A DNA stretch of 64,000 bases, from the NCBI GenBank assembly GCA_053919585.1, contig CM132794.1; one strand, given 5' to 3'. The translations under genes and the position numbers were made by a program. Positions 4,158-63,300 of the stretch are shown piece by piece. Origin of the DNA: Euprymna scolopes (Eukaryota). The notes under the pieces are model-generated. The model was not told the origin of the DNA. It ran no database searches and worked only from the letters and a program-made list of their open reading frames with translations. How positions within the stretch are numbered: position 1 is the first letter of the stretch; every line of letters begins with the position of its first letter.

Positions 4158-5189
4158 GTTCTTTCTCTTTCTCTCAAATAAATTAGTTCCTCTGAAAAAT
4201 GTCAAGAAATCGAAATAACAAGAACGGAAGCATTGCGTGTGTAGTGATGAAGAAGGAAATAATCTGCCATCATTCAATGTGTAAATAATAGCATTAACTT
4301 ATTTGAATTATTTCTGCACCATCAGCTTCTTTAGCAATTAATGCATAAGCATTAGCAATGCACTGTGCTGCACAAGTTGACAATCTTTCTGCGATGGCGT
4401 TTTGTTATTATTTTCAAATCTCAGACTGTTATCCTCATCTTGATTGTTGTGTTCATAATGTTTAATTCATTACAAATTTTGGCCTTCTTCACATGCCTGT
4501 TCTCATATTTTGGCCTTCTTTCATAATGGCTTGACTTTCTTCAGGTGACATTTGTCGTAGTTTGTTAAGCTTCTGGAAATTTTAAACTGAAGCTTTTGCT
4601 TTATCTTACTAGGAACAAAAACAAGTCAAATAAAATAAAATTTTACAAAACTATAACAAAAATCACGGAATTAGATAGTAGAACGAACAAAACTTTGTGA
4701 ACATAACAACAAAGATGAGGATAATAGAAGAAAACTTGTTTTTTTAAATCAATTTGACATGTGACAGGCATGGACATAAGCGGCTGAAAACAATGTGAGC
4801 ATGCTCTTGCTAGACACACCTGTGAGGTACAAGAATTCAATATAAGGATGAATCTCATGTCATTAAGGAGTGAGGATGGTATATCGATCATAGCACATGT
4901 GGTGAATTCAGTTATAAGGAGTTGGTCTAACTAATTGCGTTAAGAGGAAGTGTGGTGTAACGAATTGAATTGCGGGGAAGTTCCGATAGTTGGATTATTT
5001 TCTTCTCCAACAACCTGAGTCACATGCAATTTACCCTTTTCTTTATCAGCGTCATCATTATCACCATATTTGGTTTAATGTCTATGGTAGATACATTTTA
5101 GAAATTGAATTTCAAATTAACCTAAATATTCTCAGGTCTTTATTTTTTCCTTATTCTCTCAAATCTATCTTTATAACTTGCACCGATGT

Positions 5190-5544
5190 TTTCCATGGCT
5201 TTGTCTTGTGAAGTGACACTTTTGACTAAACTCTTCTACATCTACAAAAAGGCTTCCCTCAGTCTTGACAGACTATGGATACCCACTGTAAAAGTGACTG
5301 TGCATGAAATTTTTGTGCCAAGAGTTGTGCAATCTCCAACCACATCTCTCCTGAGTCGACATTGTTGAATGCCAGTGGCAAGTGGAGGTTCAGGACGACT
5401 GGAAACAATGCCGAGATAAGCAGAAAGCACATACAGTGCCTAGAATTCGCATTGGTCATCCGTCTGGTACTGGCCAGACTCAATGTTGCTTAACGTCAGT
5501 GATCTGACGAGAACCGGCATGTCAACGCGATTATGCCATACAAC
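5190..5544 (-). mobile_element. 5S rRNA-derived SINE (SINE3-like) or 5S pseudogene plus body
   Basis: Reverse complement of 5427-5544 reads ...GCCGGTTCTCGTCAGATCACTGACGTTAAGCAACATTGAGTCTGGCCAGTACCAGACGGATGACC..., a diverged match to metazoan 5S rRNA; no 5S array context. Confidence 0.7.
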
Positions 5545-12805: not shown

Positions 12806-13094
12806 TACTATGAAACCTGACATGCAGAGAAAAAGAACAATGTGTTGACGACATAAAAGAGTTAAGGTGTCTTCAAGATGTCCTCATTGTTTTTGGTTGG
12901 TGTAAAGTTCATGTTATTCATTATATATGCGTGTGCAAGCATAAATATTTTGTAGTTTTTTATCTGAATTGAAATAAGAGTTTCTGTATTTTTCATATTT
13001 GGATGGAAAAAGATTTTTTAAAAAATCAGCAGAATGCATGGGAGTCTCCATATAATCTCTTATGTAGTTGTTTTTCCCTATTTTTATTATTGTC

Positions 13095-14343
13095 ATTGCA
13101 TACAGAAATCACTTTTTCCATTGTTTCCAATAGATGTACTGAGACTAAAGCCACTTTCAGGACTGCCAGCAACCACTGCAAAAGAGTAATAAAGAACACA
13201 AGAGAATTGTGTGCTCAGTCCATTAAATTCAAAGTAGCTGAGCAGCAGCTTTGTTGCCACCAGTTTTGGCAAATAGTAAACAGGGTCCTAACAGAAGTGT
13301 GTACTCTATCCCAATCATCATCACCTGGACATAAGGTAATCTCGTCAGTATTGGACAAAGCCAAACTCTTTGCCAAGAACTTTGCAGCTAATTCTACCCT
13401 ATGCAATCAAGGCTGCCAACCCTTTGTATTTCCTCCTGTATCTGAAAACATGCTATGCAACATACAAATATCTGTGCATGATGTTACCAAGCTAATAAAA
13501 AACCTTGATTTCAGTAAAGCAACTGGCCCTGACAGCATTCCAATTATAGTGCTGAAAAAGCTTCAACCAGAACAAGTTCTCGTACTTACAAAGCTGTTTA
13601 AGTGTTGTCTTAAGAAGAATTGCTTCCCAACACCCTGGAAAACCTTATCATTTAATATTTATATTTAAGAATTCAGTTGATTGGTCATCTCTCTCTCAGC
13701 ACAGACCAATCAGTCTCCTGTGTGTCATAAGTAAGTTGCTGGAATTTGTTAAATAGAGAAGTAGTCAACCACCTCAGCAATAATAACCTCTTTAATGATA
13801 TGCTATATGGTTTCAGTTCTGCTAGATCTAAAGCAGATGTGCTAACACTATATCTCATAGCATTAGTGAATCTCTAGATGGAGGGTTCCTTTCTAAGGCA
13901 ATTGCTCTTGACATAGCTCCAGTAGATATCTCACTGCTGATGCAATTCTCTACTTGTATAAGAGTCAAACTGTTGGCACATCTGAGCAGGAGCTACTAGA
14001 TACACATTATCCTGCCTAGACACAGTTCATAATAGACTTTGTAGCCTAGTAGGGGGGGGGATGCCCTTTTCTCTTTCCTGCAACCTTTTTCCCACAGAAG
14101 AGTCGTTGCGAGTTTGTCTCCGCTTTATCGTTATTTTCATAGCATTGTCTGAGCTCTAATCCATGGTCCTCTATTGCCTAACTTTCATGAAAAAACACTC
14201 GTTTAGCTGAAACCAATATCAATAATTTCCCTCACTCTTTATCTGTGCCTAAACCTAAACAGAGATTCCATGAACAAAGTTTCTTTCTTAGAACTGCATG
14301 CCTGTGGAACTCTGTTCTATTTGCCTGCTTTCTAGCTGACTAC
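13095..14343 (+). mobile_element. CR1/Zenon-like LINE, internally deleted and 3'-truncated
   Basis: KAKLFAKNFAANSTL, KATGPDSIP, FP.PWK; colinear with the 43326-46554 copy. Confidence 0.9.
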
Positions 14344-14344
14344 T

Positions 14345-15699
14345 GAAACCGGCATACCTTTAATTAATTAATAACTACAGCCACCAAAATGTTTTGAAGA
14401 ATAGGCTAACATAAATAACTTAACTAAATTAATGAAGGAACCATCCTCTCATAGCCACTTAACACCATCTCAAGCGCTATTGTTTAGTACTGAGCTAAAT
14501 GAAAAGAAATACAGTATGCCATCAAATAGGTAAAGGTGAGTACACTTTGCATACTTAATAATTAAACACCCGAAATTGATTAACTAAAATAATCCAAGGC
14601 TCTAGCATGCTTGTAATTGGAATGTTGATATATACCTATGGGAAGTATTATAGTAAAACAGCATTCCATAAGGAAACCAACCACATAATTGATCCCAAAC
14701 GATAATTAAGTACCATTAACTAGAGGGCTTTGGGAACAGAATACTCCACCAATATAGACAAATATGTGCTATTATGTACCTGTTTGCATGTATATGGTCT
14801 GAAAAACTTATCTCTATAACGAAGCATATAAACCTATAAAATATATTTATACTCTAGTGTTAAAGAAAAGATAAACAAACCAAATGAAAGAATGACAACC
14901 ATCGAAATTAAGTTTATATATAGATTTGAAAACCTTTGCCACTGTAAATACTTCAGACACAAAGGTAGAGTGGAAAATATCGCCCAGTATACCACCTTTA
15001 TTTAAATCATATAAATAGGCTTGTATATCTATTCACTGGCCGTTAATTTAACCATGTGGACATATATCTTACAAATAAACACATAAATAAAGAAAGAAAA
15101 GATTTGAAAATGAGAAGCAAATGAATGGATAAAAAAACTAGGAATAAAATAAATAAATAAATAGAACTCAACAATAAAATCACCACCAAAAAAGAAAAAA
15201 AAAACAACTATAAAAACCAAAGATAGGGAAGTATACAGCAATGAGGGCATAATATTACTTCAGACCAAAGCGAAAACTTAGGCCAATAAACAACCACCAA
15301 GTTAAAATAATACCAATACTCTCCTCGCTGCTACAGCTTGACCAAATAAGATCATACTTCCTCCTCTTCCCTGAACCCCCACCCCTACTCCCTTCCTTCA
15401 CCATACTACCCTCTAAAACCCCTACTGCTCACATTCACAAAGTATACACCCCACTTTCTTCCAAAGCGGAAACCACACCCAAGTATCTTATAAAAAACGA
15501 ATGTAATCTTGACTTTTTTTTGGTCTGATGAGGTGGTCTCCTTGAATTAGGATTCCACTGAAACATGTATACACATATGTAACCAATAATGTTTGTATAA
15601 TAAACAGATTATATACCAGCTCTGTCCTTCATTGAGCACTCTTTAATAATCACACGAGTTTCATTGGATTTAACCTCTAGGAAACCAATCTATACAACC

Positions 15700-15705
<6 letters not shown>
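14345..15705 (+). mobile_element. Probable decayed Penelope-like element 3' end / pseudo-LTR carrying the hammerhead
   Basis: Begins where a CR1 copy is abruptly cut; contains the hammerhead followed by AATAAA (15599-15604) and ends in (TA)n. Coding traces are only faint (EWIKKLG-like near 15120). Confidence 0.4.
15520..15586 (+). ncRNA. Type I hammerhead ribozyme
   Basis: TTGGT-CTGATGA-GGTGG(tc TCCT tgaatt AGGA tt)CCACT-GAAA-CATGT atacac ATATG-TA-ACCAA: complete core CUGAUGA/GAAA/GUA with helices I (5 bp), II (5+4 bp) and III all pairing. Confidence 0.85.
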
Positions 15706-15755
<50 letters not shown>

Positions 15756-15758
<3 letters not shown>

Positions 15759-15917
15759 TCATGATCGGTCCAGTGGTGTAGGCTGTAGGAGAGTTATACA
15801 CACAGACACACATGAACGCTACTACTTATATATATATATATATTTAAGTAGTAGCGTTCATGTGTGTCTGTGTGTATAACTCTCCTACAGCCCACACCAC
15901 TAGACCGATCATGACCA
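15756..15917. repeat. 73-bp-arm inverted repeat centred on (TA)n
   Basis: 15756-15828 is the reverse complement of 15845-15917 with 2 mismatches. Confidence 0.95.
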
Positions 15918-17193
15918 AACCTTGCATGATGATTGTCCCCCACCTAGGGATGGTGCACACTATTTTTCAAGGTTAAGGTCATAGCCTATGTATATATACT
16001 CTCCTACAGCCCACACCACTGGACCGATCATGACCAAACCTTGCATGATGATTGTCCCCCACCTAGGGATGGTGCACACTAGTTTTCAAGGTTAAGGTCA
16101 TAGCCTATGTATAAATACTCTCCTACAGCCCACACTACTAGACCGATCATGACCAAATCTGACATAATGATGGTCCCCCATCTAGGTATGGTGCACACTA
16201 GTTTTCAAGGTTAAAGTCATAGCCTATGTATAAATACTCTCCTACAGCCCACACTACTAGACCGATCATGACCAAATCTGACATAATGATGGTCCCCCAT
16301 CTAGGTATGGTGCACACCATTTTTCAAGTTCATGGTCAAGGATTAAGATCATTTTTGGTGTGGCTCTTCATAAACTCCCCCACCTAGGAATGATGCACAC
16401 CAAGTTGAGGTTCGCCACCATCCGGGGGCCCCCACCATGGTGCCAGCCAACTTCTTTGTGAATTCGAATCAAATCACCTTCCTCCACCCCCATGCGATGG
16501 CTTATGTTCGGTGAATGGGCTGAGTCAACCTATTCATCACTTTCACGACAAATCCAAAGTGGACAGAAATTACAGAAAACTTGCTTCAACGACAAGAACT
16601 TCAGGATCATCCAGATATTATTACCAACGTTTTTAGATAGAAGCTAAAAAAGCTAATGGAATGTATTAAAAATGGAGGATTTGGTAGGTTGAGGGCTTTC
16701 CTGTACAGCAGAAGAGGACTGCTACATGAACACCTCCTCACCTGGCAGGCCCCAAAGGACAAAGTTCAACCACAATAAATGGATCTCTGCAAATATGCAA
16801 AGATCCCTGACAAATAGGAAGACCTTGAACTTCACACAAAAGTGATGGCACATATGGTGCACAGACTTGTGAACCATTGAATCTAAGTTGCCCATGTATG
16901 ATCGACAACAAATGCTCCAAATGTACTCTAAAAATTTCTTCAGTGTACCGAACAAGGCCAGGACTCTTATCCCAAGTACAGGCAAAGGAAACCAGAAGAT
17001 GGAGTGTGGACTGGTACAATAAGGATGAAGAAAAATGGTCGGTATGTGCATCAAGAAATCACAAATCAGTAGATGTTTCTTTACAACAGGGTCCTCCTTC
17101 AGTAGTTCAACGTTTATATTAATGTAGAAATTATAGAAATTTGTACTAAAGTGTACAGCTAAGTCCTGCACGTCGTGCAAGTATCTTTGCTAG
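15829..17193 (+). mobile_element. Internally deleted Helitron with 119-bp tandem repeats and Rep (HUH) coding remnant
   Basis: About 16493-17130 encodes broken AMAYVR..LFITFTTNPKWTEI..DHPDII..VFR*KLKKLM..FG..RGLLHEHLL, HMVH, CPCMIDNKCSK, YPKYRQR, INVE; 3' hairpin TGCACG-T-CGTGCA then CTAG|T at 17190-17193. Confidence 0.85.
15880..16330. repeat. 119-bp tandem repeat x ~3.8 within the Helitron
   Basis: Unit CTCTCCTACAGCCCAC... starts at 15880, 15999, 16118 and 16237. Confidence 0.95.
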
Positions 17194-28109: not shown

Positions 28110-30849
28110 CTAACCCCATCCTCCAACGTCGACCCCTACTACCATGCCTCCTTCTCTAACATCAGGGGTCAACATTCCAACATTCCAGAGGTTGAAACAC
28201 AATTGCAAGAGAAGAAACCGGTAATATTGTTCCTCAGCAAAACTAGATGAGTTCATAATTAATGGATACTCTAACTTAACATCTAAATCTGACCCCCAAG
28301 ATCGCCATGGTCATGGAATATGTGCCTACATTAGAGATGGCTTTCCATGTGGTAGGGATATCTCCAGAGAAGACCCTAATTTACCTTATATGTGCCTCCG
28401 GGTTGCACTTACTTACACCATTGCATTTATATTTGCCGTCTATCGCCCCCACAACAGCAGAGTCACTATCTTTAAGAGCATAGCTGAGAAAATTCGGCTA
28501 CATCCACATCTGTGATGACTTCAATGTCCACAATGTGGAATGGCTGACCCATTCAAACAAGACAGATGATGAGGGGAGGTTCTGTCATGACTTCTCCATT
28601 GCCTATAACCTCACTCAGATTGTTCACGAACCTACCCATGTGCCCGATACTACCGGTCAGTATGCAAGCCTTCTAGACCTTTTTCTCACAACTTCCCCTG
28701 AGCTATGTTCATGTTCCGTTCTATCTCCTCTGGGATCTTCCGACCACTCGGTTGTATCAGTTAAAATAAAAATGATATGTAACAAGCCTTCAGATGTACC
28801 TCTCCACTATACAGTATATCGATACTCTATGGCTGACTGGGATAGCTTCCATACATTTATGTCTGATCTACCTCTTCATTCGATGTTTAAAAAGGATGTG
28901 TCCTCTATAGTATCAGACCCGATCGAATGGTTAATTGTAGGTATAGACCGATTCATACCATCCAAAAGATTCCAACAAAAACCTAACAACCAGCCATAGT
29001 TCTCCCCAGAATGTGCTGCTCCCATCGTACACAGAAATCACTTTTTACCAACGTAATAGATGTACTGAGACTAAAGCCGCCTTCAGAACTGCCAGCAACC
29101 ACTGTAAAAGAGTAATAAAGAATGCAAGAGAGCTATATGCTCAGTCCGTTAAATCCAAAGTAGCTGAGCAGTTGCTTGGTTCCCACCAGTTTTGGCAAAT
29201 AGCAAACAGGATTTTCAACAGAAGCGTGCATTTTATCTCAACCATCATCAATGGACTTGAGGTCATCTTGTCAGTATCAGACAAGGCCAATTCCAATTAT
29301 AGTGCTGAAAAAGCTTCAACCAGAACTTGCCCCCTTGTTACCTTAAAGAGAAGTGCTTCCCAACACCCTGGAAAACCTCATCAGTATGCCCTGTATTTAA
29401 GAATTCAAGTGATGTCGTCTCCCTCTCAGTACAGACCAATAAGTCTCCTGTGTGTCATGAGTAAGTTGCTGGAATCCATATTAAACAGAGAAGTGGTCAA
29501 CCACCTCAGCAGAAATAGCCTTCTTAGTGACATGCAACATGGTTTCCGTTCCGCTAGACCTACAACGGTTATATCTCATAGGATTAGTGAATCCCTCGAT
29601 AAAGGCTTCCTTTCCAGGGCAATTGCTCTTGACATATCAAAGGCCTTTGATAAGGTATGGCATAAAGGCCTACTTCACAAGATTTCCAGCTACAGTATAA
29701 CTGGAAATGTTTTCTTAATTATTAAATCATTTCTCTCTGATAGGCTCATAAGAGTAGTGGTTGATGGGTAGAAATCAGAGGCCCTCAGTATTAATCCTGG
29801 TGTCCCTCAAGGGTCCATCCTGGGCCCAACTCTCTTCCTGATCTGCATAAATGATCTCCCAAAACACATACTTAAATCATTCGTTGACATCTATGCAACA
29901 CATCAAAGGCCATAAATGACAAAGTTCTCTCTGATTCTCTCTCCTCTGATCTCGAGCGCGTGGTACAGTGGGGGAAGAGGTGTCTGGTTACTTTTAATGC
30001 ATCTAAAACCAAACTTCTATCTTTACATCATCAACGCTCTGATCCCCATCTGGCATGAATTGAAATGGATGGCTCTCGTCTTGGGGAGGCTCCATGATTT
30101 GAAAAGCTTTTGGGATTGACCTTAAGCCTGATCTGAAATAGAACACATACATCAAATCTGTTGTCAGGGTTGCTGGAAAGATGGTGGGATCCTTCTACCG
30201 CTCCAGAAGATATCTCACTGCTGATGCAATTCTCTATCTATATAAAAGCCAAGTACGTCCAAAGATGGAGTACTGATGCCAAATCTGGACAGGAACTGCT
30301 AAAAACAGCTTATCCTGCCTTAACAGAGTACAAAATAGACTTCATAGCCTAGTGAGGGATGCCCTTTTCTCTTCCCTGCAACCTCTCTCCCACAGATGGG
30401 ATGTAGCGAGCCTGTCTTTGTTTTATCGTTATTTCCATGGAAAGTGCTCATCTGAGCTCCAATCTCTGGTCCCCCCTTGCAAATCTTTCACGAAAACACC
30501 TGTCTAGCTGAAACCACTGTCAGTAATATTCCTTACTCTTTATCTGTGGCAAAACCAAAATGTAGATTCCATGAGCAGAGCTTCTTTCTTAGAAGTACAC
30601 GCCTGTGGAACTCTCTTCCGTTTGTCTGTTTCCTACCTGACTACAACTTGGATGTCTTCAAGTCCAACATAAACAAGTTCCTGATGAACCGCCTCCTTAA
30701 GTAAGACACTTTATCAGATCTCCATTACTAACAATTACTACGATATTATGCCATTGATTACTATACATGCAATAACCCTTATCCCCGAGTGTCCTTCGGG
30801 CCTTGATAAGTGTTGACTTCCTTGTAAAAAAAAAAAAAAAGAAAAAAAA
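28110..30849 (+). mobile_element. CR1/Zenon-like LINE, near full-length with deletions and poly(A) tail
   Basis: APE motifs (LDLFLT, LGSSDH), RT motifs (YRPISLL, LDISKAFDKVWH, GVPQGS), stops and frameshifts, A-tail at about 30826-30849. Confidence 0.92.
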
Positions 30850-35370: not shown

Positions 35371-35588
35371 GTTTTTTGTATTCGGATCCAATTCGTGAAG
35401 TGAAGCATTTTGCTACGGAACTGAAGATGGATGAAAAAGTCTGTGTGACCAATTGCAATTCTGAGTTGACCGCAGAAAAACTAAAAAAAATTGTTGACGA
35501 ATGTTTTAACAACGGCTGTTGGTTAATCCTGCAGAATTACCACATGTGTGTGGCTAACATCCATCTACAACTTGCAAGTATTCTGAAG
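35371..35588 (+). CDS. Exon C of DNHD1-like dynein heavy chain (AAA6 region), phase 1-0
   Basis: Long polypyrimidine tract + catcag|, AAG|gtaaga; (G)FLYSDPIREVKHFATELKMDEK...GCWLILQNYHM...ILK matches dynein DP...L..FA and G.WV.LQN.HL; phase matches exon B. Confidence 0.9.
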
Positions 35589-36579
35589 GTAAGAAACAAA
35601 CGACAAAACACACTGTTTTCTTTGGGGGGGGGGTATAAAAAGGTAACATACTAAACCACCGATTACCATGACAAATATCACTCTGCCTGAGAGTTCATGG
35701 TTCAAACTCTTCGACTTAACATTTACAGGAAACAGGAATTGAAACAAATACATTGAGTACATTCTCAAGGCTGCTGTAAAGAAGGTGGGCTCGCTCTGCC
35801 ATGCTAGAAAATTGCTCACACAAAAGAGTATCTTATACCTCTACTAAGCCACCTTTTATCCATGCATGGAGCATTGTTGCCACATCTAAACTAGTGCTTC
35901 TACCACTAGTCTCTCCCTCTTAGAGTTGATAAAAGAGAGCCTCCAATCTAATAGGTTTCAAACTATCAGCCAAGCTCCAATCTCAGTCCCATCACTACAA
36001 TGTTGCACCCCTGTGCCCATTGTAAAAGTACTTTAATGGAATATGCTCTGATGAACTCATTGCGCTTGTTCCTTTCAACGTAATATTCCCAACTAACCTG
36101 ACAAGCAGCAAAATCACACCCCTTCACTGTTGAAGTCTCTAAACGACAAGAAAACCTTTTACTCTAAGTTTTTTTCCCCTCAGAATACAAGACTTTGGAT
36201 TTTCCTACTTGTTTTCTGACATGCGGGGGTTTAAATGTAACGTGAATAGACATCTTGCTTCTCAACTCCCCATGATCCTCTGTAAGACATGATCACAAAT
36301 ACTAGCCCCTTACAACCCAGTCTTGTTTGGAGTGAAAAATAAATATGTCTTGTTTGGAGTGAAAAAGGGTCAAAAAAAATAAATCTTGAGTTTTGGAATT
36401 GTTTTTGCTGTAAGTGTTAGATATTGAGGAGAAACTGAGAGAACCTTAGATCTGATGAACTCAAAAGAAGATTAAATGTGACCGATGCAGGGAAATGTAT
36501 GCAGAACGGCCACATTAAATAAAGTAGATGCTCTTAGGTTGGTAGATGTAGAACAGTTGATGTAGCAAGATCAGTTGTA

Positions 36580-52865: not shown

Positions 52866-54141
52866 CGAGAGGTGTGCAATAAGTAATGCGCCTGCTCCAC
52901 TTCTCATAGCAGTAGAGCAACGAAACTTGGCACAGTTATTAGTCTTTCTCTACATAGGAATCATTCAGAGTTATGTATTTCTCCCATCGTTTGATGCAGC
53001 TCTGGAGACCGTTTTTGTAGAACACCTCAGGTTGGTCCTCCAACCACGACATGACTTCAGAAATCAAGGCTGCATCATCTGGGAAACGCTTTCCTTTAAA
53101 AAATAACTTCATGGCTGGGAAGAGGTGAAAGTCAGAGGGTGGAAGGTCAGGAGAGTAGGGAGGATGGGGAAATATTTCATAGCCACATGCCCTTGCTTCT
53201 GATCTGGCGGCATGCGAGTTCTGGACCGGAGCGTTGTCCTGCAGGAGGATGGTACCTTTGTTGATCTTGCCCCGTCTCTTGATTTTGATAGCTTCCCTTA
53301 ATTTCCTCAAAAGTGAAGCATAATAGGCTCCTGTAATTGTAGTACCCTTTGCCAGGAAATCTGTCATCACTACTCCATCCTGGTCCTAGAAGACTGTGAG
53401 CATGACCTTGCCTGCGGAGTACTGCACCCTTGCCTTCTTTGGAGGTGGTGAGTCCAAGTGCTTCCACTGCATTGACTGGGCTTTGGTCTCTGGATCATAG
53501 TGATGGACCCAGGTTTCATCCTGTGTAATGAGTCTTTTGAAAAATTTTGACTCATCTTCTTGGCACATCTCCAAATTCATCCTCGATGCGTTTTTCCTTC
53601 TGGAATGGTGTGATCAACCTGGGAATCCATCTGGTAGACACCTTATGCATATGCAAATGGTCATGAATGATAGTTTCCACAGACCCTGTACTAATCTTGA
53701 CATCTTGGACTATTAGGCGAATAGTAATGTGCCGATATTCCAAAATGGCAGCCTCAACGTGACGGACAGATGCCTCATCAATGGCAGAAGGGGGGGGGGC
53801 GACCAGGTCTGGGAGCTGTTTCCACAGACTTCCGGCCATGTTTGAATTCACGATGCCAGCGTTTTACAAGGTCATATGATGGCGCATTATCACCATAAGT
53901 TTCTTTCATTTCATCAAATGTGCGTCCTTTCAAATACAAAAACCAGATTACTGCTCGACACTCAACAGGCTCCATTTCACACCTGACTTAGTTCAAACAT
54001 CTGTAAAACAGAAACCACAATTAGTTCAGAACTGTGCTTGCTACATAACCCTTAGAGATATAAATCATTGCACATGCAAAATTTCTGCTAGATTGGACAA
54101 CTGGAAGTGAGTCAGGGTCATTACTTATTGCACGCCCCTCG
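52866..54141 (-). mobile_element. Full-length mariner, same family as 39053-40333, frameshifted
   Basis: TA-flanked TIRs; TQDETW, LLQDNA, HPPYSPDLPPSDFHLF. Confidence 0.95.
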
Positions 54142-55684: not shown

Positions 55685-57006
55685 CGAGGTGCTTTCAATA
55701 AGTTTCAAAATTCTTTTCCTATGTGCACTTTTATTAATAGTACACACATAGAACTCTAGTCCCATTCGAAGTAATCTTCTCTGGCTGCAATGCACTTGTT
55801 GTACCGTTCCAACAACTTTTGGAAGGCCCCATGGTAGTCCTCTTGTGTGAGCATGTCAATGACCCTTGTCACAACTTTGTTCATCTCCTCAATTGTCTCA
55901 TAACGACAGCCTCTAAGGTTTCCTTTGAGGTTAGGGAATAGCCAAAAGTCACAGGGAGCAAGGTCTGAACTATAGGGAGGATGAGGAATTGTCTTGATGT
56001 TATTCTGTATTAAATAGTCTTTGACAAGGATAGAGTTGTAGACCAGTGCATTGTCCTCGTGGAAATGCCACTGACCCAATTTGAAGAGTACTAGCCTCTT
56101 CTGACAGAATCTCTTCCTAAACTCGAGTCTCAGTATTCCTTGTTGACTGTCTGTCCAATGGGAACCTAGTCCATGTAGATCATGCCTGCGCTGTCAAAAA
56201 AAAAAGGGACCATCATAAAGTTTCTGGGTGGGTTTGCTCTGTCTGGCCTTCTCAGGTCTGGGAGAGCCAGCATGCTTCTGCTGGAAAGTCTATTTCTTGG
56301 TCTCTGGGTCATAGCAGTAGATCCAGCTTTCATCGCATGTCACCAGAGCATCAAGAACTATGGGATCTGAATTGATCAGCTTGACCATCTCCTTGTTGTC
56401 ATGATAACGTCTTTCTTTCTGATCTTCTTTTCGCACCCTTGAGACAAACTTTGCACAAATCTTCCCCATTTTCAGTGCCTCACAAATAATTGTGTGTACA
56501 ATTCCCACACTCACATCAAACTGTGCACTTATTGTCTCTATAGACACACGACGGTCTTATTCATGAAAGTCTTTATTTGGCCAATCAACTCTAGTGTTCT
56601 GACTTTCTTATTCCTTCCACATCTCTCATCATCCCTCACAGACTCCCTGCTTATGCCACTCAAAAACTGATTCTCAATTCATACAAGATGATACAAAAGC
56701 AGTCTGAAGCATTCCATATGATTCTGTGCCATTTTTTCCCAAGTTTAAAACAAACTTTTATTGTATATCATTCTCCTAAAGTGTCCTCATGTCAAGATTG
56801 CATTTTGGAAATTCACCAGCTGTGACAATCAGGCTTTAATAGAGTGTATTCCAATTCCTGCTGTAGCTATATATGTGAACCTGAAAGCATAAAAATCGGT
56901 CAGTCATCTCATAAGATGTATAGCAATAACATACTGAATTTTCAAGAGTCTATGACAATTTTAAATACTTGTACAAAAAAAGTCTGGAAATTTATTAAAG
57001 GTATCT

Positions 57007-60390: not shown

Positions 60391-63300
60391 TCGGAAGGAA
60401 AGCTGGTCCATTATTGAATAAATATCGATTAAAAACACATTTTATGACCGTTCTTGAAGGGGATATTGTTTTTAAAGGTTACTACGCACCCTCATAATAT
60501 TTTTAAAAATTATAAACCATATATTTATTTTAAAATATTTTTTAGTTTTAACACTTTTTGTGGTCAATTTTTACAAGCCTTTATAAATAATATGAAAAGA
60601 GAAATTTGGAAAAAAAAATAGCATTTTAGAGTGGGGGGATCATTTTCCCATATAAATTTAACGTAAAGTGATGACCCATTTCTTAGCCACAATGGTTGAC
60701 AAGACATATTTCAAGTTTGGCGAGCGCGGGGAGGGTGTGGAAGGGCGGAAAACATGACAATATGGGGGGGGGGATTACATTTGAACATAAAATAACGATA
60801 TATTTAATTAAAATTTTAGTAGTGTTGGGGGTGGAGGATTTAAAACATAAAATAACACGATAAATTTAATTTTCGTGGAGGGAGGGGGAAATACCAAATT
60901 TCTTTTTACATATTATTCTTCAAAGCCATTTAAGTAGATGTTCATTTTTTAGGGATTAAACGATGCTGTTTTTTTTTTTTCGGGGGGGGGGGGGCAAAAT
61001 AAAACGAAAAAATGAATGAATTATTAATTAACACACAACCTACCTTTAAAAACTTCTCTAGGGGTTTTCGGTGTGCTGAAAACGAATATCACATTTAAAA
61101 TTGGGGCCGGCACTAGTTTTCGTTTTCACGGTATTACAAGCATATTTTTATCCGCATATTTCATATATAAATGTAACGTGGTGACCATGCTTGTTTTTTT
61201 AGACTTGCAGAATCGTGTGTATGTGGGGGGGGGGGACAATGAAATGACAAGATAATGTGGAGCTAATTTATTATTATTATTATTATTATTATTATGACAT
61301 CTATGCTGATGACACGACCATCTACGTCAACACATCAAAGGCTGTAAATGACAAAGTTCTCTCTGATTCTCTCTCCTCTGATCTCGAGCGCGTGGTTCAG
61401 AGAGGGGGAGACATCATCAACGCTCTGATCCCCATCTGGCATCAATTGAAATGGATGGCTCTCGTCTAGGAGAAGCCCCATGTTTTGACAAGCTTCTGGG
61501 TTTGTCCTTTACTCCTGATCTGAAATGGAACATGTACATTGTCTGTTGCCAAGGTCGCTGGAAAGATGGTGGAATCCTTCTACCGCACCAGAAGATATCT
61601 CACTACTGATGTAATTCTCTATCTATATAAAAGGATGGAATAATGCTGCCATATCTGGGCAGGAGCTGCTAAAAACTGCCTATCCTGCCTTGACAGAGTA
61701 CAAAATAGACTTTGTGGCTTAGTGGGGGATGCCCTTTTCTCTTCCCTGCAACCTCTCTCCCACAGAAGAGATGTTGCGAGCCTATCCTTGTTTTATCGTT
61801 ATTTCCATGGCAGGTGCTCGTCTGAACTCCAATCTCTGGTCCCCCCTCGCCAATCTTTCATGAAAAACACCCGTCTAGCTAAATCCACTGTCAAAAATTT
61901 TCCCCACTCTTTATCTGTGCCTAAATCAAAACGTAGATTCCATGAACAAAGCGTCTTTCTTCGAACTGCACTCCTGTGGAACTCTGTTCCGTCTGCCTAC
62001 TTCCCACCTGACTACAACCTGGATGTCTTCAAGTCCAAAGTAAACAAATTCCTAATGAACCGCCCCCTTAAGTAAACACTTCATTAAATCTCCATACTAA
62101 CGTACTGTACTTACAATAACCCTTATCCCTGAGTGGTTTCCGGGCCTTGATAAGTGATGACCACCGTGTAAAAAAAAATTATTATTATTATTATTATAAA
62201 TAATAATAAAAAAGAAAAAGAAATAAAATAAAAACATTGATTTTTGTACGCGCAAGCGCGCATATTTTTGCTAAAAAATACAAGAAGTGTTTTCGGTACT
62301 TATGTATTATTTGATAATATAAGACTTTTTTGTTTGTTTGTTTGTTTGTTTAAATGTCATTTGGGGGAGAACTTTTGCAGTATGCAGATGGCGGCTATTG
62401 TTACTCCAATTACTTCTTGGTTAAATAACGCTGCAAATAAGTAAGAAACAAGATTTTTTTCCGAACAGAAAATATTTGAAAACCAAAACATTTATTGTAT
62501 TAAAATGTATCAATATATAATTGTAAAAACATTTATTTAAAAGTCTACGTAAAAAATATAATTTTACTAAAACAATTGTGTAATGAAAGCAACATTGGAT
62601 TTTTATACAGTAAAATAGCTTTTGTTTTCGAACAAATAAATAATTAAGATGAAACACTTTTTTCAATTAAAGAAACTTTGAAGGGCCAACAAAAATTAAT
62701 AACTTAAATGTTTTTGGACCGAAAAGCGCCACCTGGCTACAGTTTAGTGAAAAGCACCAAGAAAAGGTCGCCGCCGTCCGCATACTGCAGAAGTGCCTTT
62801 TTTTTTTTTTTGTTATTCAATTTTCACCCGAAACAAGACACAGTGCCATTTTGAAGCAGGGGGCTTTTTGTTGTTTCGTGAACATAAAAAGTGTTACAAC
62901 TAAATTAATTTTTAAAAATTTGATAATACAAGAATTGTTTTCTTTTTTTGTTTGTTTGTTTCGTAATAACACAAGAGAAGAGGTGTTAAAAACTACAGTA
63001 TATTTTTTTATAAATATATGGTTTCGTTTTTCGTGTCTTCCGTTCGATTGCGTTACATAATCAACCGTATCAACTTCCGAGCAGTTATCTAGGACATTAT
63101 CTACAAATATACAAATATATTTTCTTTTGGAGGGTGAGGGGTGTTTTAAAACTATAGCTACCACAGTATTTTCTTTAATTTTCTATTTTTGGGCGATTAT
63201 CGAGACTCGTAAGATATGATTCTCTCATGTCAGACATTTTTTGTTCAAAAGTAACAATCGCTATATTTTTAACTAAGTAAACTCTTTAAAATAAGTTGAA

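What the first reader, a model, noticed from the sequence alone, without database searches (positions are those of the whole stretch)
15520..15586. Apparently intact type I hammerhead ribozyme, sense-oriented in a 23-kb dynein-gene intron
Seen: every core element is present in order with pairing stems. Helix I is TTGGT(15520-24)/ACCAA(15582-86); core CTGATGA is at 15525-31; helix II is GGTGG/CCACT extended by TCCT/AGGA; GAAA is at 15560-63; helix III is CATGT/ATATG; the GUA cleavage triplet predicts a cut after 15581. AATAAA follows about 17 nt after the cut site. Known: Penelope-like elements and retrozymes carry type I hammerheads, usually with a minimal helix III that needs dimerisation. 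Inference: this copy has a full helix III, so it could cleave as a monomer. It looks intact although the surrounding element is unreadable, and it would be transcribed with the host pre-mRNA, where cleavage could affect splicing or termination.
Basis: partly seen in the sequence, partly recalled or inferred. Interest (0 to 1): 0.8.

Follow-up and report, generated by a model that had tools for sequence, protein, structure and literature searches.

The report
Penelope-element hammerhead in dynein intron
The motif is a real, intact-looking hammerhead ribozyme, but it belongs to a dead, truncated copy of a Penelope-like jumping gene that has left well over a thousand equally intact copies in this 5.9-Gb cephalopod genome, so it is an ordinary transposon part and not a host invention.

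Summary
Window 15520-15586 (+) carries every hammerhead core nucleotide, with three pairing helices, and folds into the three-way junction on its own.

The host-element reading does not hold. The motif is the family signature of a repeat:
- 1,788 genomic sites match CTGATGA-N24-32-CTGAAACATGTAT, against 0 in the reversed control.
- 1,083 sites keep all core boxes plus the 3' strand of helix I.

The window copy (14346-15756) is a 5'-truncated piece, 3' UTR only, of a Penelope-like element (PLE) ending in (TA)n. Longer copies carry decayed reverse-transcriptase and C-terminal GIY-YIG endonuclease remnants. A related family with an open 716-codon frame shows the diagnostic motifs of the "Hydra" PLE clade (DKT, CxCX5C, CxxC/CxH). 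It has pseudo-LTRs with one hammerhead each and sits in (TA)n.

Between the two families, helix III and the 3' flank are identical. Helices I and II differ by compensatory changes, which argues for a selected ribozyme fold.

No Rfam model detects the motif. Cleavage was not shown, because only RNA contigs were available.

The scan has already found hammerhead retroelements many times on other DNA of this genome. Verdict: new member of a known kind, low interest.

The parts
14346..15756 (+). 5'-truncated copy (3' UTR, hammerhead and tail only) of a Penelope-like retroelement, long-form 3' end
   Evidence: Homology to about 20 copies starts at 14339-14362 and ends at 15756. The equivalent position in longer copies lies about 156 nt after the end of the GIY-YIG ORF remnant.
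15520..15586 (+). Type I hammerhead ribozyme motif (helix I open)
   Evidence: Family-wide presence.
15525..15531 (+). Core box CUGAUGA (C3-A9)
   Evidence: Intact in 23 of 39 aligned copies.
15532..15559 (+). Helix II: 5 bp (first pair G.U), 2x2 internal loop, 4 bp, loop UGAAUU
   Evidence: Compensatory variants between subfamilies and families.
15560..15563 (+). Core box GAAA (G12, A13, A14, A15.1)
15563..15580 (+). Helix III: 6 bp (ACAUGU/AUAUGU) with a 6-nt loop. 15571 is A here and G in most copies.
   Evidence: (15571 A>G in most contigs).
15581..15582 (+). Predicted self-cleavage site (after A17 of GUA)
   Evidence: Inference from hammerhead numbering. Not shown experimentally.
15599..15604 (+). 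AATAAA hexamer, conserved in the family
15606..15615 (+). Internal (A)UAUAUA site where short-form copies end and (TA)n begins, about 32 nt after the cut site
   Evidence: L009, L029, L042, L044, L051. The downstream pLTR of L070 ends here.
15703..15756 (.). (TA)n microsatellite at the 3' end, the preferred target
   Evidence: (TA)n lies on both sides of the copy in L062.
12973..14343 (+). Unrelated LINE fragment (RT N-terminal and C-terminal pieces, internally deleted, last ~200 nt missing) joined directly to the PLE copy
35382..35594 (+). Dynein heavy chain exon (D6 P-loop region), which gives the host gene orientation
   Evidence: PF03028, 32.5 bits.

Best explanation
Window 15520-15586 is the hammerhead ribozyme of a Penelope-like retrotransposon (PLE), most likely of the Hydra clade (C-terminal GIY-YIG endonuclease, (TA)n target).

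In full-length relatives the motif sits near the 3' end of each pseudo-LTR. It lies about 32 nt before the point where the downstream pseudo-LTR meets (TA)n, and about 125 nt before a TATATAAA box that precedes the ORF.

The window holds a dead copy. Reverse transcription started in a (TA)n tract and stopped, or switched template, after 1.41 kb, so only the 3' UTR, the ribozyme and the tail were inserted into a dynein heavy chain intron.

Shown:
- the motif itself
- its family-wide conservation
- compensatory changes in helices I and II between families
- the PLE coding remnants
- the pseudo-LTR arrangement
- the (TA)n ends

Inferred:
- The ribozyme self-cleaves element transcripts after GUA, as a monomer thanks to its 6-bp helix III, to process pseudo-LTR or tandem precursor RNA.
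- New copies are primed by pairing of nicked (TA)n DNA with UAUAUA stretches downstream of the ribozyme.
- This copy kept its ribozyme intact by chance, and any cutting of the dynein pre-mRNA is a by-product.
For: Copy number:
- 4,114 first-look candidates.
- 1,788, 1,195 and 1,083 exact pattern hits, each against 0 in controls.

Element limits and scars:
- 5' truncations.
- Head-to-head inverted 5'-truncated partners.
- (TA)n at the 3' end, and on both sides in L062.

Coding remnants upstream of the 3' UTR in L061, L062, L063 and L067:
- a thumb-like piece (Atlas HTH_animal, 0.96)
- a GIY-YIG piece (Pfam E 0.002; Atlas 0.90)
- CxCX5C and CxxC..CxH motifs
- a YSDDG box

Related family in L070:
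- an open 716-codon frame with DKT, CxCX5C, CxxC and CxH
- pseudo-LTRs 6-663 and 4556-5214
- one hammerhead in each pseudo-LTR

These are the features that PMC8557442 (section 11) lists for Hydra PLEs, including (TA)n targeting and readily detected hammerheads.

Covariation:
- First pair of helix I is U-A here and C-G in L070.
- Helix II is GUGG/CCAC + UCCU/AGGA here and GUAAUC/GAUUAC + CCC/GGG in L070.
- Within the genome, GCUG/CAGC, GCGA/UCGC, GCUA/UAGC and GAUUUC/GAAAUC also occur.

Transcription: the family, and this locus, are present in poly(A) RNA-seq contigs.
Against: - No Rfam hammerhead model hits the motif, even at E<=10 on 261 nt.
- The thermodynamic signal is weak (z -1.3). Helix I is only 5 AU-rich base pairs and is lost in a longer context.
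- RNAalifold on the family alignment does not recover the fold.
- Within the family there is no covariation beyond shuffles, as expected for neutrally decaying copies.
- The 10.1-11.1 pair is R-U or a mismatch, not the usual G-C.
- Pfam sees neither an RT nor a GIY-YIG domain in the open 716-aa frame. The Hydra assignment therefore rests on short motifs read by eye against a paper's description.
- Copies that begin exactly at the cut site are rare (12 against 1,195), so there is no clear genomic footprint of cleaved RNA.
- Cleavage itself was not observed.
Confidence: 0.85

Rival explanations
1. Host-exapted ribozyme: this particular intronic copy is kept intact because its cleavage of the dynein pre-mRNA regulates splicing or termination.
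For: The motif is sense-oriented to a dynein heavy chain exon. The core is intact although the copy is about 10-20% diverged from its relatives. AATAAA lies 17 nt downstream. RNA contigs identical to this locus exist.
Against: At least 1,083 other copies are equally intact. About 59% of sampled copies keep CUGAUGA, which is what neutral decay predicts. The AATAAA is a family feature. No conservation data exist for this locus.
Confidence: 0.03
2. The conserved three-way junction is mainly a recognition or priming module for the element's reverse transcriptase, and it cleaves poorly or not at all. The hammerhead core would then be a relic or have a second role.
For: The 3' half (GAAAC...GUAACCAAUAAUGUUUGUAU) is nearly invariant, even between two families whose proteins are about 57% identical. 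That is more than pairing alone requires. It lies just upstream of both alternative 3' ends. Metazoan PLE hammerheads cleave poorly in vitro (PMC4209133). Few copies start at the cut site.
Against: All eleven core nucleotides are kept in both families. Helices I and II change by compensation, which is the signature of a selected hammerhead fold. The two roles are not exclusive.
Confidence: 0.1
3. The motif is part of the 3' UTR of the LINE (APE + RT) that lies immediately upstream in the window, which would make it a LINE-borne hammerhead.
For: The LINE C-terminus lies directly upstream, in the same orientation, in the window, L003, L046/L064 and L067.
Against: The LINE has its own 3' end with a poly(A) tail before the joint. 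The joints fall at different positions of the hammerhead element. Longer hammerhead copies carry their own GIY-YIG ORF. L070 is a complete pLTR-ORF-pLTR unit without the LINE.
Confidence: 0.02

Closest known systems
Hammerhead ribozymes in the pseudo-LTRs of Penelope-like elements (Cervera & de la Pena 2014, PMC4209133)
   Same: Type I topology, location in the PLE terminal repeats, long helix II (5+4 bp), short helix I (5 bp) without a defined loop 1, thousands of dispersed copies, and pairs on opposite strands 100-700 bp apart.
   Different: Metazoan PLE hammerheads described there have no helix III, or a 1-2-bp palindromic one, and are thought to act as dimers. Here helix III is 6 bp with a 6-nt loop, more like the monomeric variants reported for fungal and protist PLEs. 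The 10.1-11.1 pair is R-U or a mismatch, not G-C.
Hydra clade of C-terminal-EN PLEs (Craig et al. 2021, PMC8557442)
   Same: Single ORF, DKT in place of DKG, CxCX5C linker, CxxC and CxH around the endonuclease E and N, no CCHH seen, insertion into (TA)n, hammerhead present, and inverted 5'-truncated partner copies.
   Different: The unit is longer (4.55 kb in L070, against <3 kb) because of a 1.3-1.6-kb 3' UTR. The host is a cephalopod with thousands of copies, whereas the paper lists only a few mollusc families. No phylogeny was made here.
Animal non-LTR retrozymes and Schistosoma Sm-alpha (Cervera & de la Pena 2020, PMC7229834)
   Same: Type I hammerhead in non-coding retroelement copies. 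Such elements are also present in this genome as ~410-bp tandem arrays with Rfam-positive hammerheads.
   Different: The window copy is not a 170-400-nt tandem unit and has no tRNA-like head. It is a truncated autonomous-type PLE. Its hammerhead is not recognised by RF00163.
Conserved intronic hammerheads of amniotes (HH9, HH10; Rfam RF02275, RF02277)
   Same: Sense-oriented hammerhead inside an intron of a protein-coding gene.
   Different: Those are single-copy and conserved across species. This one is one of over 1,000 copies, and no Rfam HH9 or HH10 hit was found.

Membership tests
Hammerhead ribozyme, type I | Conserved core: C3 U4 G5 A6 N7 G8 A9, G12 A13 A14, A15.1-U16.1 pair, H17 not G | tested here: met
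   CUGAUGA 15525-31, GAAA 15560-63, U 15580, A 15581. The same holds in the related family, with N7 = A.
Hammerhead ribozyme, type I | Three helices around the core, with helix I open (5' and 3' ends in helix I) | tested here: met
   The MFE fold of the 67-mer gives helices I (4-5 bp), II (5+4 bp) and III (6 bp). 88% of cells are paired in 39 copies.
Hammerhead ribozyme, type I | Helices supported by compensatory changes | tested here: met
   Between families: helix I U-A to C-G, and helix II wholly replaced but still paired. Between subfamilies: GUGG/CCAC, GCUG/CAGC, GCGA/UCGC. Within the shallow family there is none beyond shuffles. Helix III is invariant, so it is uninformative.
Hammerhead ribozyme, type I | G10.1-C11.1 pair and loop-loop tertiary contacts | tested here: inconclusive
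   10.1-11.1 is G.U here, A-U in about half of the copies, and mismatched in some subfamilies. No recognisable loop 1. Loop II UGAAUU is conserved, but its role is unknown.
Hammerhead ribozyme, type I | Site-specific Mg2+-dependent self-cleavage | not testable with these tools
   Only assembled RNA contigs were available, and contigs cannot show ends.
Rfam Hammerhead_1 (RF00163) and other Rfam hammerhead models | Score at or above the gathering threshold | tested here: not met
   No hit at gathering on the window, nor at E<=10 on 15420-15680. The model does find other hammerheads in this genome at 42-57 bits.
Penelope-like elements (PLE) | Reverse transcriptase joined to a GIY-YIG endonuclease in one ORF | tested here: inconclusive
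   The GIY-YIG remnant is below Pfam's cut-off (18.7 against 22.6 bits), with Atlas 0.90. RT boxes (FDIMDYYP, YRDDG) and YIG...FKNRF...H were read by eye in the open 716-aa frame. Pfam finds nothing in that frame.
Penelope-like elements (PLE) | Pseudo-LTRs (partial tandem), frequent 5' truncation, inverted 5'-truncated copy at the 5' end | tested here: met
   pLTRs in L070, 4,551 bp apart. 5' truncation gradient. Inverted partners.
PLE, Hydra clade | DKT motif, CxCX5C linker, CxxC and CxH flanking the EN E/N, no CCHH, (TA)n target, hammerhead present | tested here: met
   ADKTRN, CNCKKPEEC, CLLC...E...N...CKH in L070. CNCQRPTEC and CYLC...CRH in the window's own family. (TA)n ends. The criteria come from PMC8557442 section 11. 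No tree was built.
Animal non-LTR retrozymes | Short (170-400 nt) non-coding units in tandem, each with a hammerhead | tested here: not met
   The copy is a single 1.41-kb 3' part of a coding element. No tandem units were seen in about 55 loci.

The most novel reading that the evidence does not exclude
The hammerhead and its about 40-nt 3' flank are nearly invariant between PLE families whose proteins have diverged to about 57% identity. They may form a dual-purpose 3' module in Hydra-clade PLEs. On this reading it is a monomeric, full-helix-III ribozyme that Rfam models miss, and it also serves as the landmark from which reverse transcription is primed on (TA)n at the nearby UAUAUA sites. The recurrent joints to LINE poly(A) ends would then record template switching by the PLE enzyme.
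Probability: 0.2. Interest if true: 0.4.

Novelty: new member of a known kind. Interest (0 to 1): 0.18.

Why it matters
It matters little for host biology. The motif is one of more than a thousand intact copies of a transposon part, and nothing suggests that the dynein gene uses it.

It has some use for annotation. A whole family of PLE hammerheads with a long helix II and a 6-bp helix III escapes every Rfam hammerhead model, so ribozyme counts in cephalopod genomes based on Rfam are underestimates.

The family also extends the little-described Hydra clade of PLEs to a cephalopod, at high copy number. Its two alternative 3' ends at UAUAUA sites, and its joints to LINE RNA, are clean material for anyone studying how PLEs prime and finish reverse transcription.

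Tried and rejected
- Rfam at gathering and at E<=10 gave no hammerhead hit. I take this as a model limitation, because the family clearly carries the core and helices.
- RNAalifold on 39 copies gave a weak, different structure at -3.55 kcal/mol.
- Pair counting within the family showed no covariation beyond shuffles. The copies are too closely related and decay neutrally, so cross-family comparison was needed.
- Laying RNA runs: all runs are stored as contigs, so no molecule ends can be read. Contigs that bridge 15581/82 exist, which shows only that uncut RNA or DNA is present.
- A genomic footprint of cleaved RNA, meaning copies that start at the cut site next to (TA)n: 12 hits against 1,195 uncut. 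This is not clearly above what two point mutations would give.
- The hypothesis that the element is the 3' UTR of the upstream LINE was rejected.
- Pfam on the open 716-aa frame gave no RT or GIY-YIG hit.
- The Atlas look-alike search for the RT piece gave no lead.

Full report
**Observation**

- Helix I is UUGGU with ACCAA.
- CUGAUGA is at 15525-31.
- Helix II has two parts: 15532-36 with 15555-59, and 15539-42 with 15549-52. Its first pair is G.U.
- GAAA is at 15560-63.
- Helix III has 6 bp, ACAUGU (15563-68) with AUAUGU (15575-80), and a 6-nt loop.
- A17 of the GUA triplet is at 15581.
- AAUAAA follows at 15599-15604.

Folded alone, the 67-mer takes exactly this three-way junction as its minimum-free-energy structure (-17 kcal/mol). 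The energy is only 1.3 SD better than shuffles. With 20 nt of flank on each side, helix I is replaced by other pairings.

No Rfam family is hit. That holds at gathering thresholds on the whole window and at E<=10 on 261 nt. The Rfam Hammerhead_1 model does find other hammerheads in this genome at 42-57 bits, partly in ~410-bp tandem arrays.

**It is a repeat**

- A 221-nt query around the motif finds 4,114 first-look candidates in the 5.9-Gb assembly. The best are 80-95% identical.
- CTGATGA-N24-32-CTGAAACATGTAT occurs 1,788 times, against 0 for the reversed control.
- A pattern that also requires GAAA, a helix III-sized gap and TAACCAATAATG occurs 1,083 times.
- The 30-mer across the cut site occurs 1,195 times.
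- In 39 aligned copies, 23 keep CUGANGA and 88% of helix cells are paired.
- A strict full-motif descriptor passes about 8 of about 55 held copies.

The window copy is therefore one of very many intact ones. The fraction that is intact is what neutral decay predicts.

**The element**

Homology to other copies runs from 14346 to 15756 and thins out towards the 5' side, as expected for 5'-truncated retrocopies. All copies end in (TA)n, but at two alternative points:
- a short form, about 32 nt after the cut site (...AATAAACAGACTATA-(TA)n);
- a long form, about 120-175 nt after it, which is the one in the window.

Both points are UAUAUA stretches. In L062, (TA)n lies on both sides of the copy, so (TA)n is the target and not a templated tail. 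Many copies have an inverted 5'-truncated partner placed head to head.

**Not the LINE**

The ORF just upstream in the window (13003-13668 and on to 14343) belongs to an APE+RVT_1 LINE. I first suspected a LINE 3' UTR. But this LINE has its own poly(A) end, and the joints to the hammerhead element lie at different positions. The two are separate elements.

**It is a Penelope-like element**

Copies that extend further 5' (L061, L062, L063, L067) carry decayed coding remnants in the same orientation, upstream of a 1.3-kb 3' UTR:
- an RT-like YSDDG box;
- FLDVTFDL...YIH..SNHPP, whose nearest Atlas clusters carry HTH_animal (0.96);
- KIIWFTPPF;
- a CNC-X5-C linker;
- VVYQA...FYIGST..TFKNRF..H, with Pfam GIY-YIG at E 0.002, below the cut-off, and Atlas 0.90 to eukaryotic GIY-YIG proteins;
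- CxxC...E...N...CxH.

A protein search of the genome with the thumb-like piece finds about 19,800 candidates. They include a related family, about 57% identical, with many open frames of about 719 codons, often in head-to-head pairs. One such copy is L070:
- It has a 716-codon frame at 810-2960.
- It has direct repeats at 6-663 and 4556-5214, 4,551 bp apart.
- Each repeat carries a hammerhead, at 575 and 5126.
- (TA)n follows right after the downstream repeat.

Its protein shows ADKTRN (DKT), CNCKKPEEC (CxCX5C), and CLLC and CKH around the endonuclease E and N. These are the features that Craig et al. 2021 give for the Hydra clade, together with (TA)n targeting and readily detected hammerheads (PMC8557442). 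Pfam recognises neither domain in this frame. That fits the stated divergence of the clade, but it leaves the assignment resting on short motifs. I built no tree.

**Evidence that the fold is selected**

The comparison is between the window family and the L070 family.
- Helix III and the 3' flank (GAAACAUGUAUGCACAUAUGUA | NCCAWUAAUGUUUGUAUAA) are identical.
- The core differs only at the free position N7.
- The first pair of helix I changes from U-A to C-G.
- Helix II is replaced by an unrelated sequence that pairs again (GUAAUC/GAUUAC plus CCC/GGG).

Subfamilies picked up by the pattern searches show further compensated helix II stems: GCUG/CAGC, GCGA/UCGC, GCUA/UAGC, GAUUUC/GAAAUC and GUCCC/GGGAC. 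The pattern did not require any pairing there. Frequent one-sided changes in helix III keep pairing, for example G.U to A-U.

**How it probably works**

From the anatomy of L070, the ribozyme lies near the 3' end of each pseudo-LTR. It is 33 nt before the point where the downstream repeat meets (TA)n, and about 125 nt before a TATATAAA box that precedes the ORF by about 55 nt.

The window's long tail (15614-15695) is homologous to the stretch that follows the upstream repeat in L070, and it ends at the homologue of that TATA box. I infer two things:
- The ribozyme trims pseudo-LTR or tandem precursor RNA. This is the role proposed in PMC4209133.
- Nicked (TA)n DNA primes reverse transcription on the UAUAUA stretches just downstream.

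With a 6-bp helix III it should not need to dimerise. That sets it apart from the minimal GAAAC-UCGA-GUC hammerheads of the tRNA-headed elements in the same genome. None of this is shown. Copies that start exactly at the cut site are rare (12).

**Host context**

A dynein heavy chain exon lies on the + strand at about 35.4 kb, so the motif is in sense. Poly(A) RNA-seq contigs hold the family in hundreds of pieces. Two contigs are identical to this locus (15290-15448 and 15454-15555), so the region is transcribed. Contigs cannot show cleavage. With over 1,000 intact copies genome-wide, a specific host role for this one has no support.

**Comparison and verdict**

The thing works like, and is, a PLE hammerhead.
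- It shares the long helix II and short helix I of the metazoan PLE ribozymes.
- It has a full helix III, like the monomeric fungal and protist PLE variants (PMC4209133).
- It is not a retrozyme unit.
- It is not an HH9 or HH10-type conserved intronic ribozyme.

Earlier notes of this scan describe many hammerhead retroelements with (TA)n targets and head-to-head scars on other pieces of this genome. My results agree, and add that this family is a coding PLE of the Hydra type. Verdict: new member of a known kind, low interest.

Noticed in passing
window 14343/14346; L003 1093-1096; L046 1188 (= L064 8174); L067 585-777: The poly(A) 3' end of one LINE family abuts directly the 5' end of differently truncated copies of the hammerhead PLE. 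In the window the LINE lacks its last ~200 nt. In L067 a 193-nt LINE 3' piece sits between an inverted PLE tail copy and the direct copy. In L064 the 600-nt LINE piece is preceded by (TA)34. This looks like template switching from PLE RNA to LINE RNA during reverse transcription. The LINE is very dense (6 copies in this window), so chance adjacency is not excluded.
   Followed up: partly
window 5428-5543 (-): 5S rRNA match at 44.4 bits, above the gathering score of 38, with several non-canonical pairs. Probably a 5S pseudogene or a 5S-derived repeat.
   Followed up: no
window 15756-16300: Right after the element's (TA)n lies a palindrome with 84-nt arms around a second (TA)n (15756-15917). It is followed by tandem units of about 119 bp whose start matches the palindrome arm. 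This is another retroelement-like insertion in the same microsatellite. No CUGANGA box was seen by eye.
   Followed up: no
L018 318-360; L046 2947-2989; L064 9933-9975: A different hammerhead family (CUGACGA, helix II AUCC/GGAU, GAAA, 4-bp helix III with a 10-nt loop, GUA) turned up in the flanks of held loci. This genome therefore has several non-minimal hammerhead classes.
   Followed up: no
L070 752-759 and window about 15696-15710: In the related full-length copy, a TATATAAA box lies about 125 nt after the hammerhead cut site and about 55 nt before the ORF start. The long-form 3' ends of the window's family fall at the homologous position, where (TA)n begins.
   Followed up: partly
window 28113-30700 (+), 38359-38781 (-), 43390-46401 (-), 48931-49254 (-), 61248-62072 (+); 39129-40190 (-), 52942-53987 (-), 55759-56556 (-): The window is packed with copies of the same LINE family (C-terminal motif HRR.VASLSLFYRYFHG...FKSNVNKFL) and with remnants that look like mariner-type transposase by eye.
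   Followed up: no
G000: More than 15,000 first-look GIY-YIG candidates, many in open frames of 800-870 codons and in head-to-head pairs. Other PLE families, with Pfam-detectable endonucleases, are abundant in this genome.
   Followed up: no
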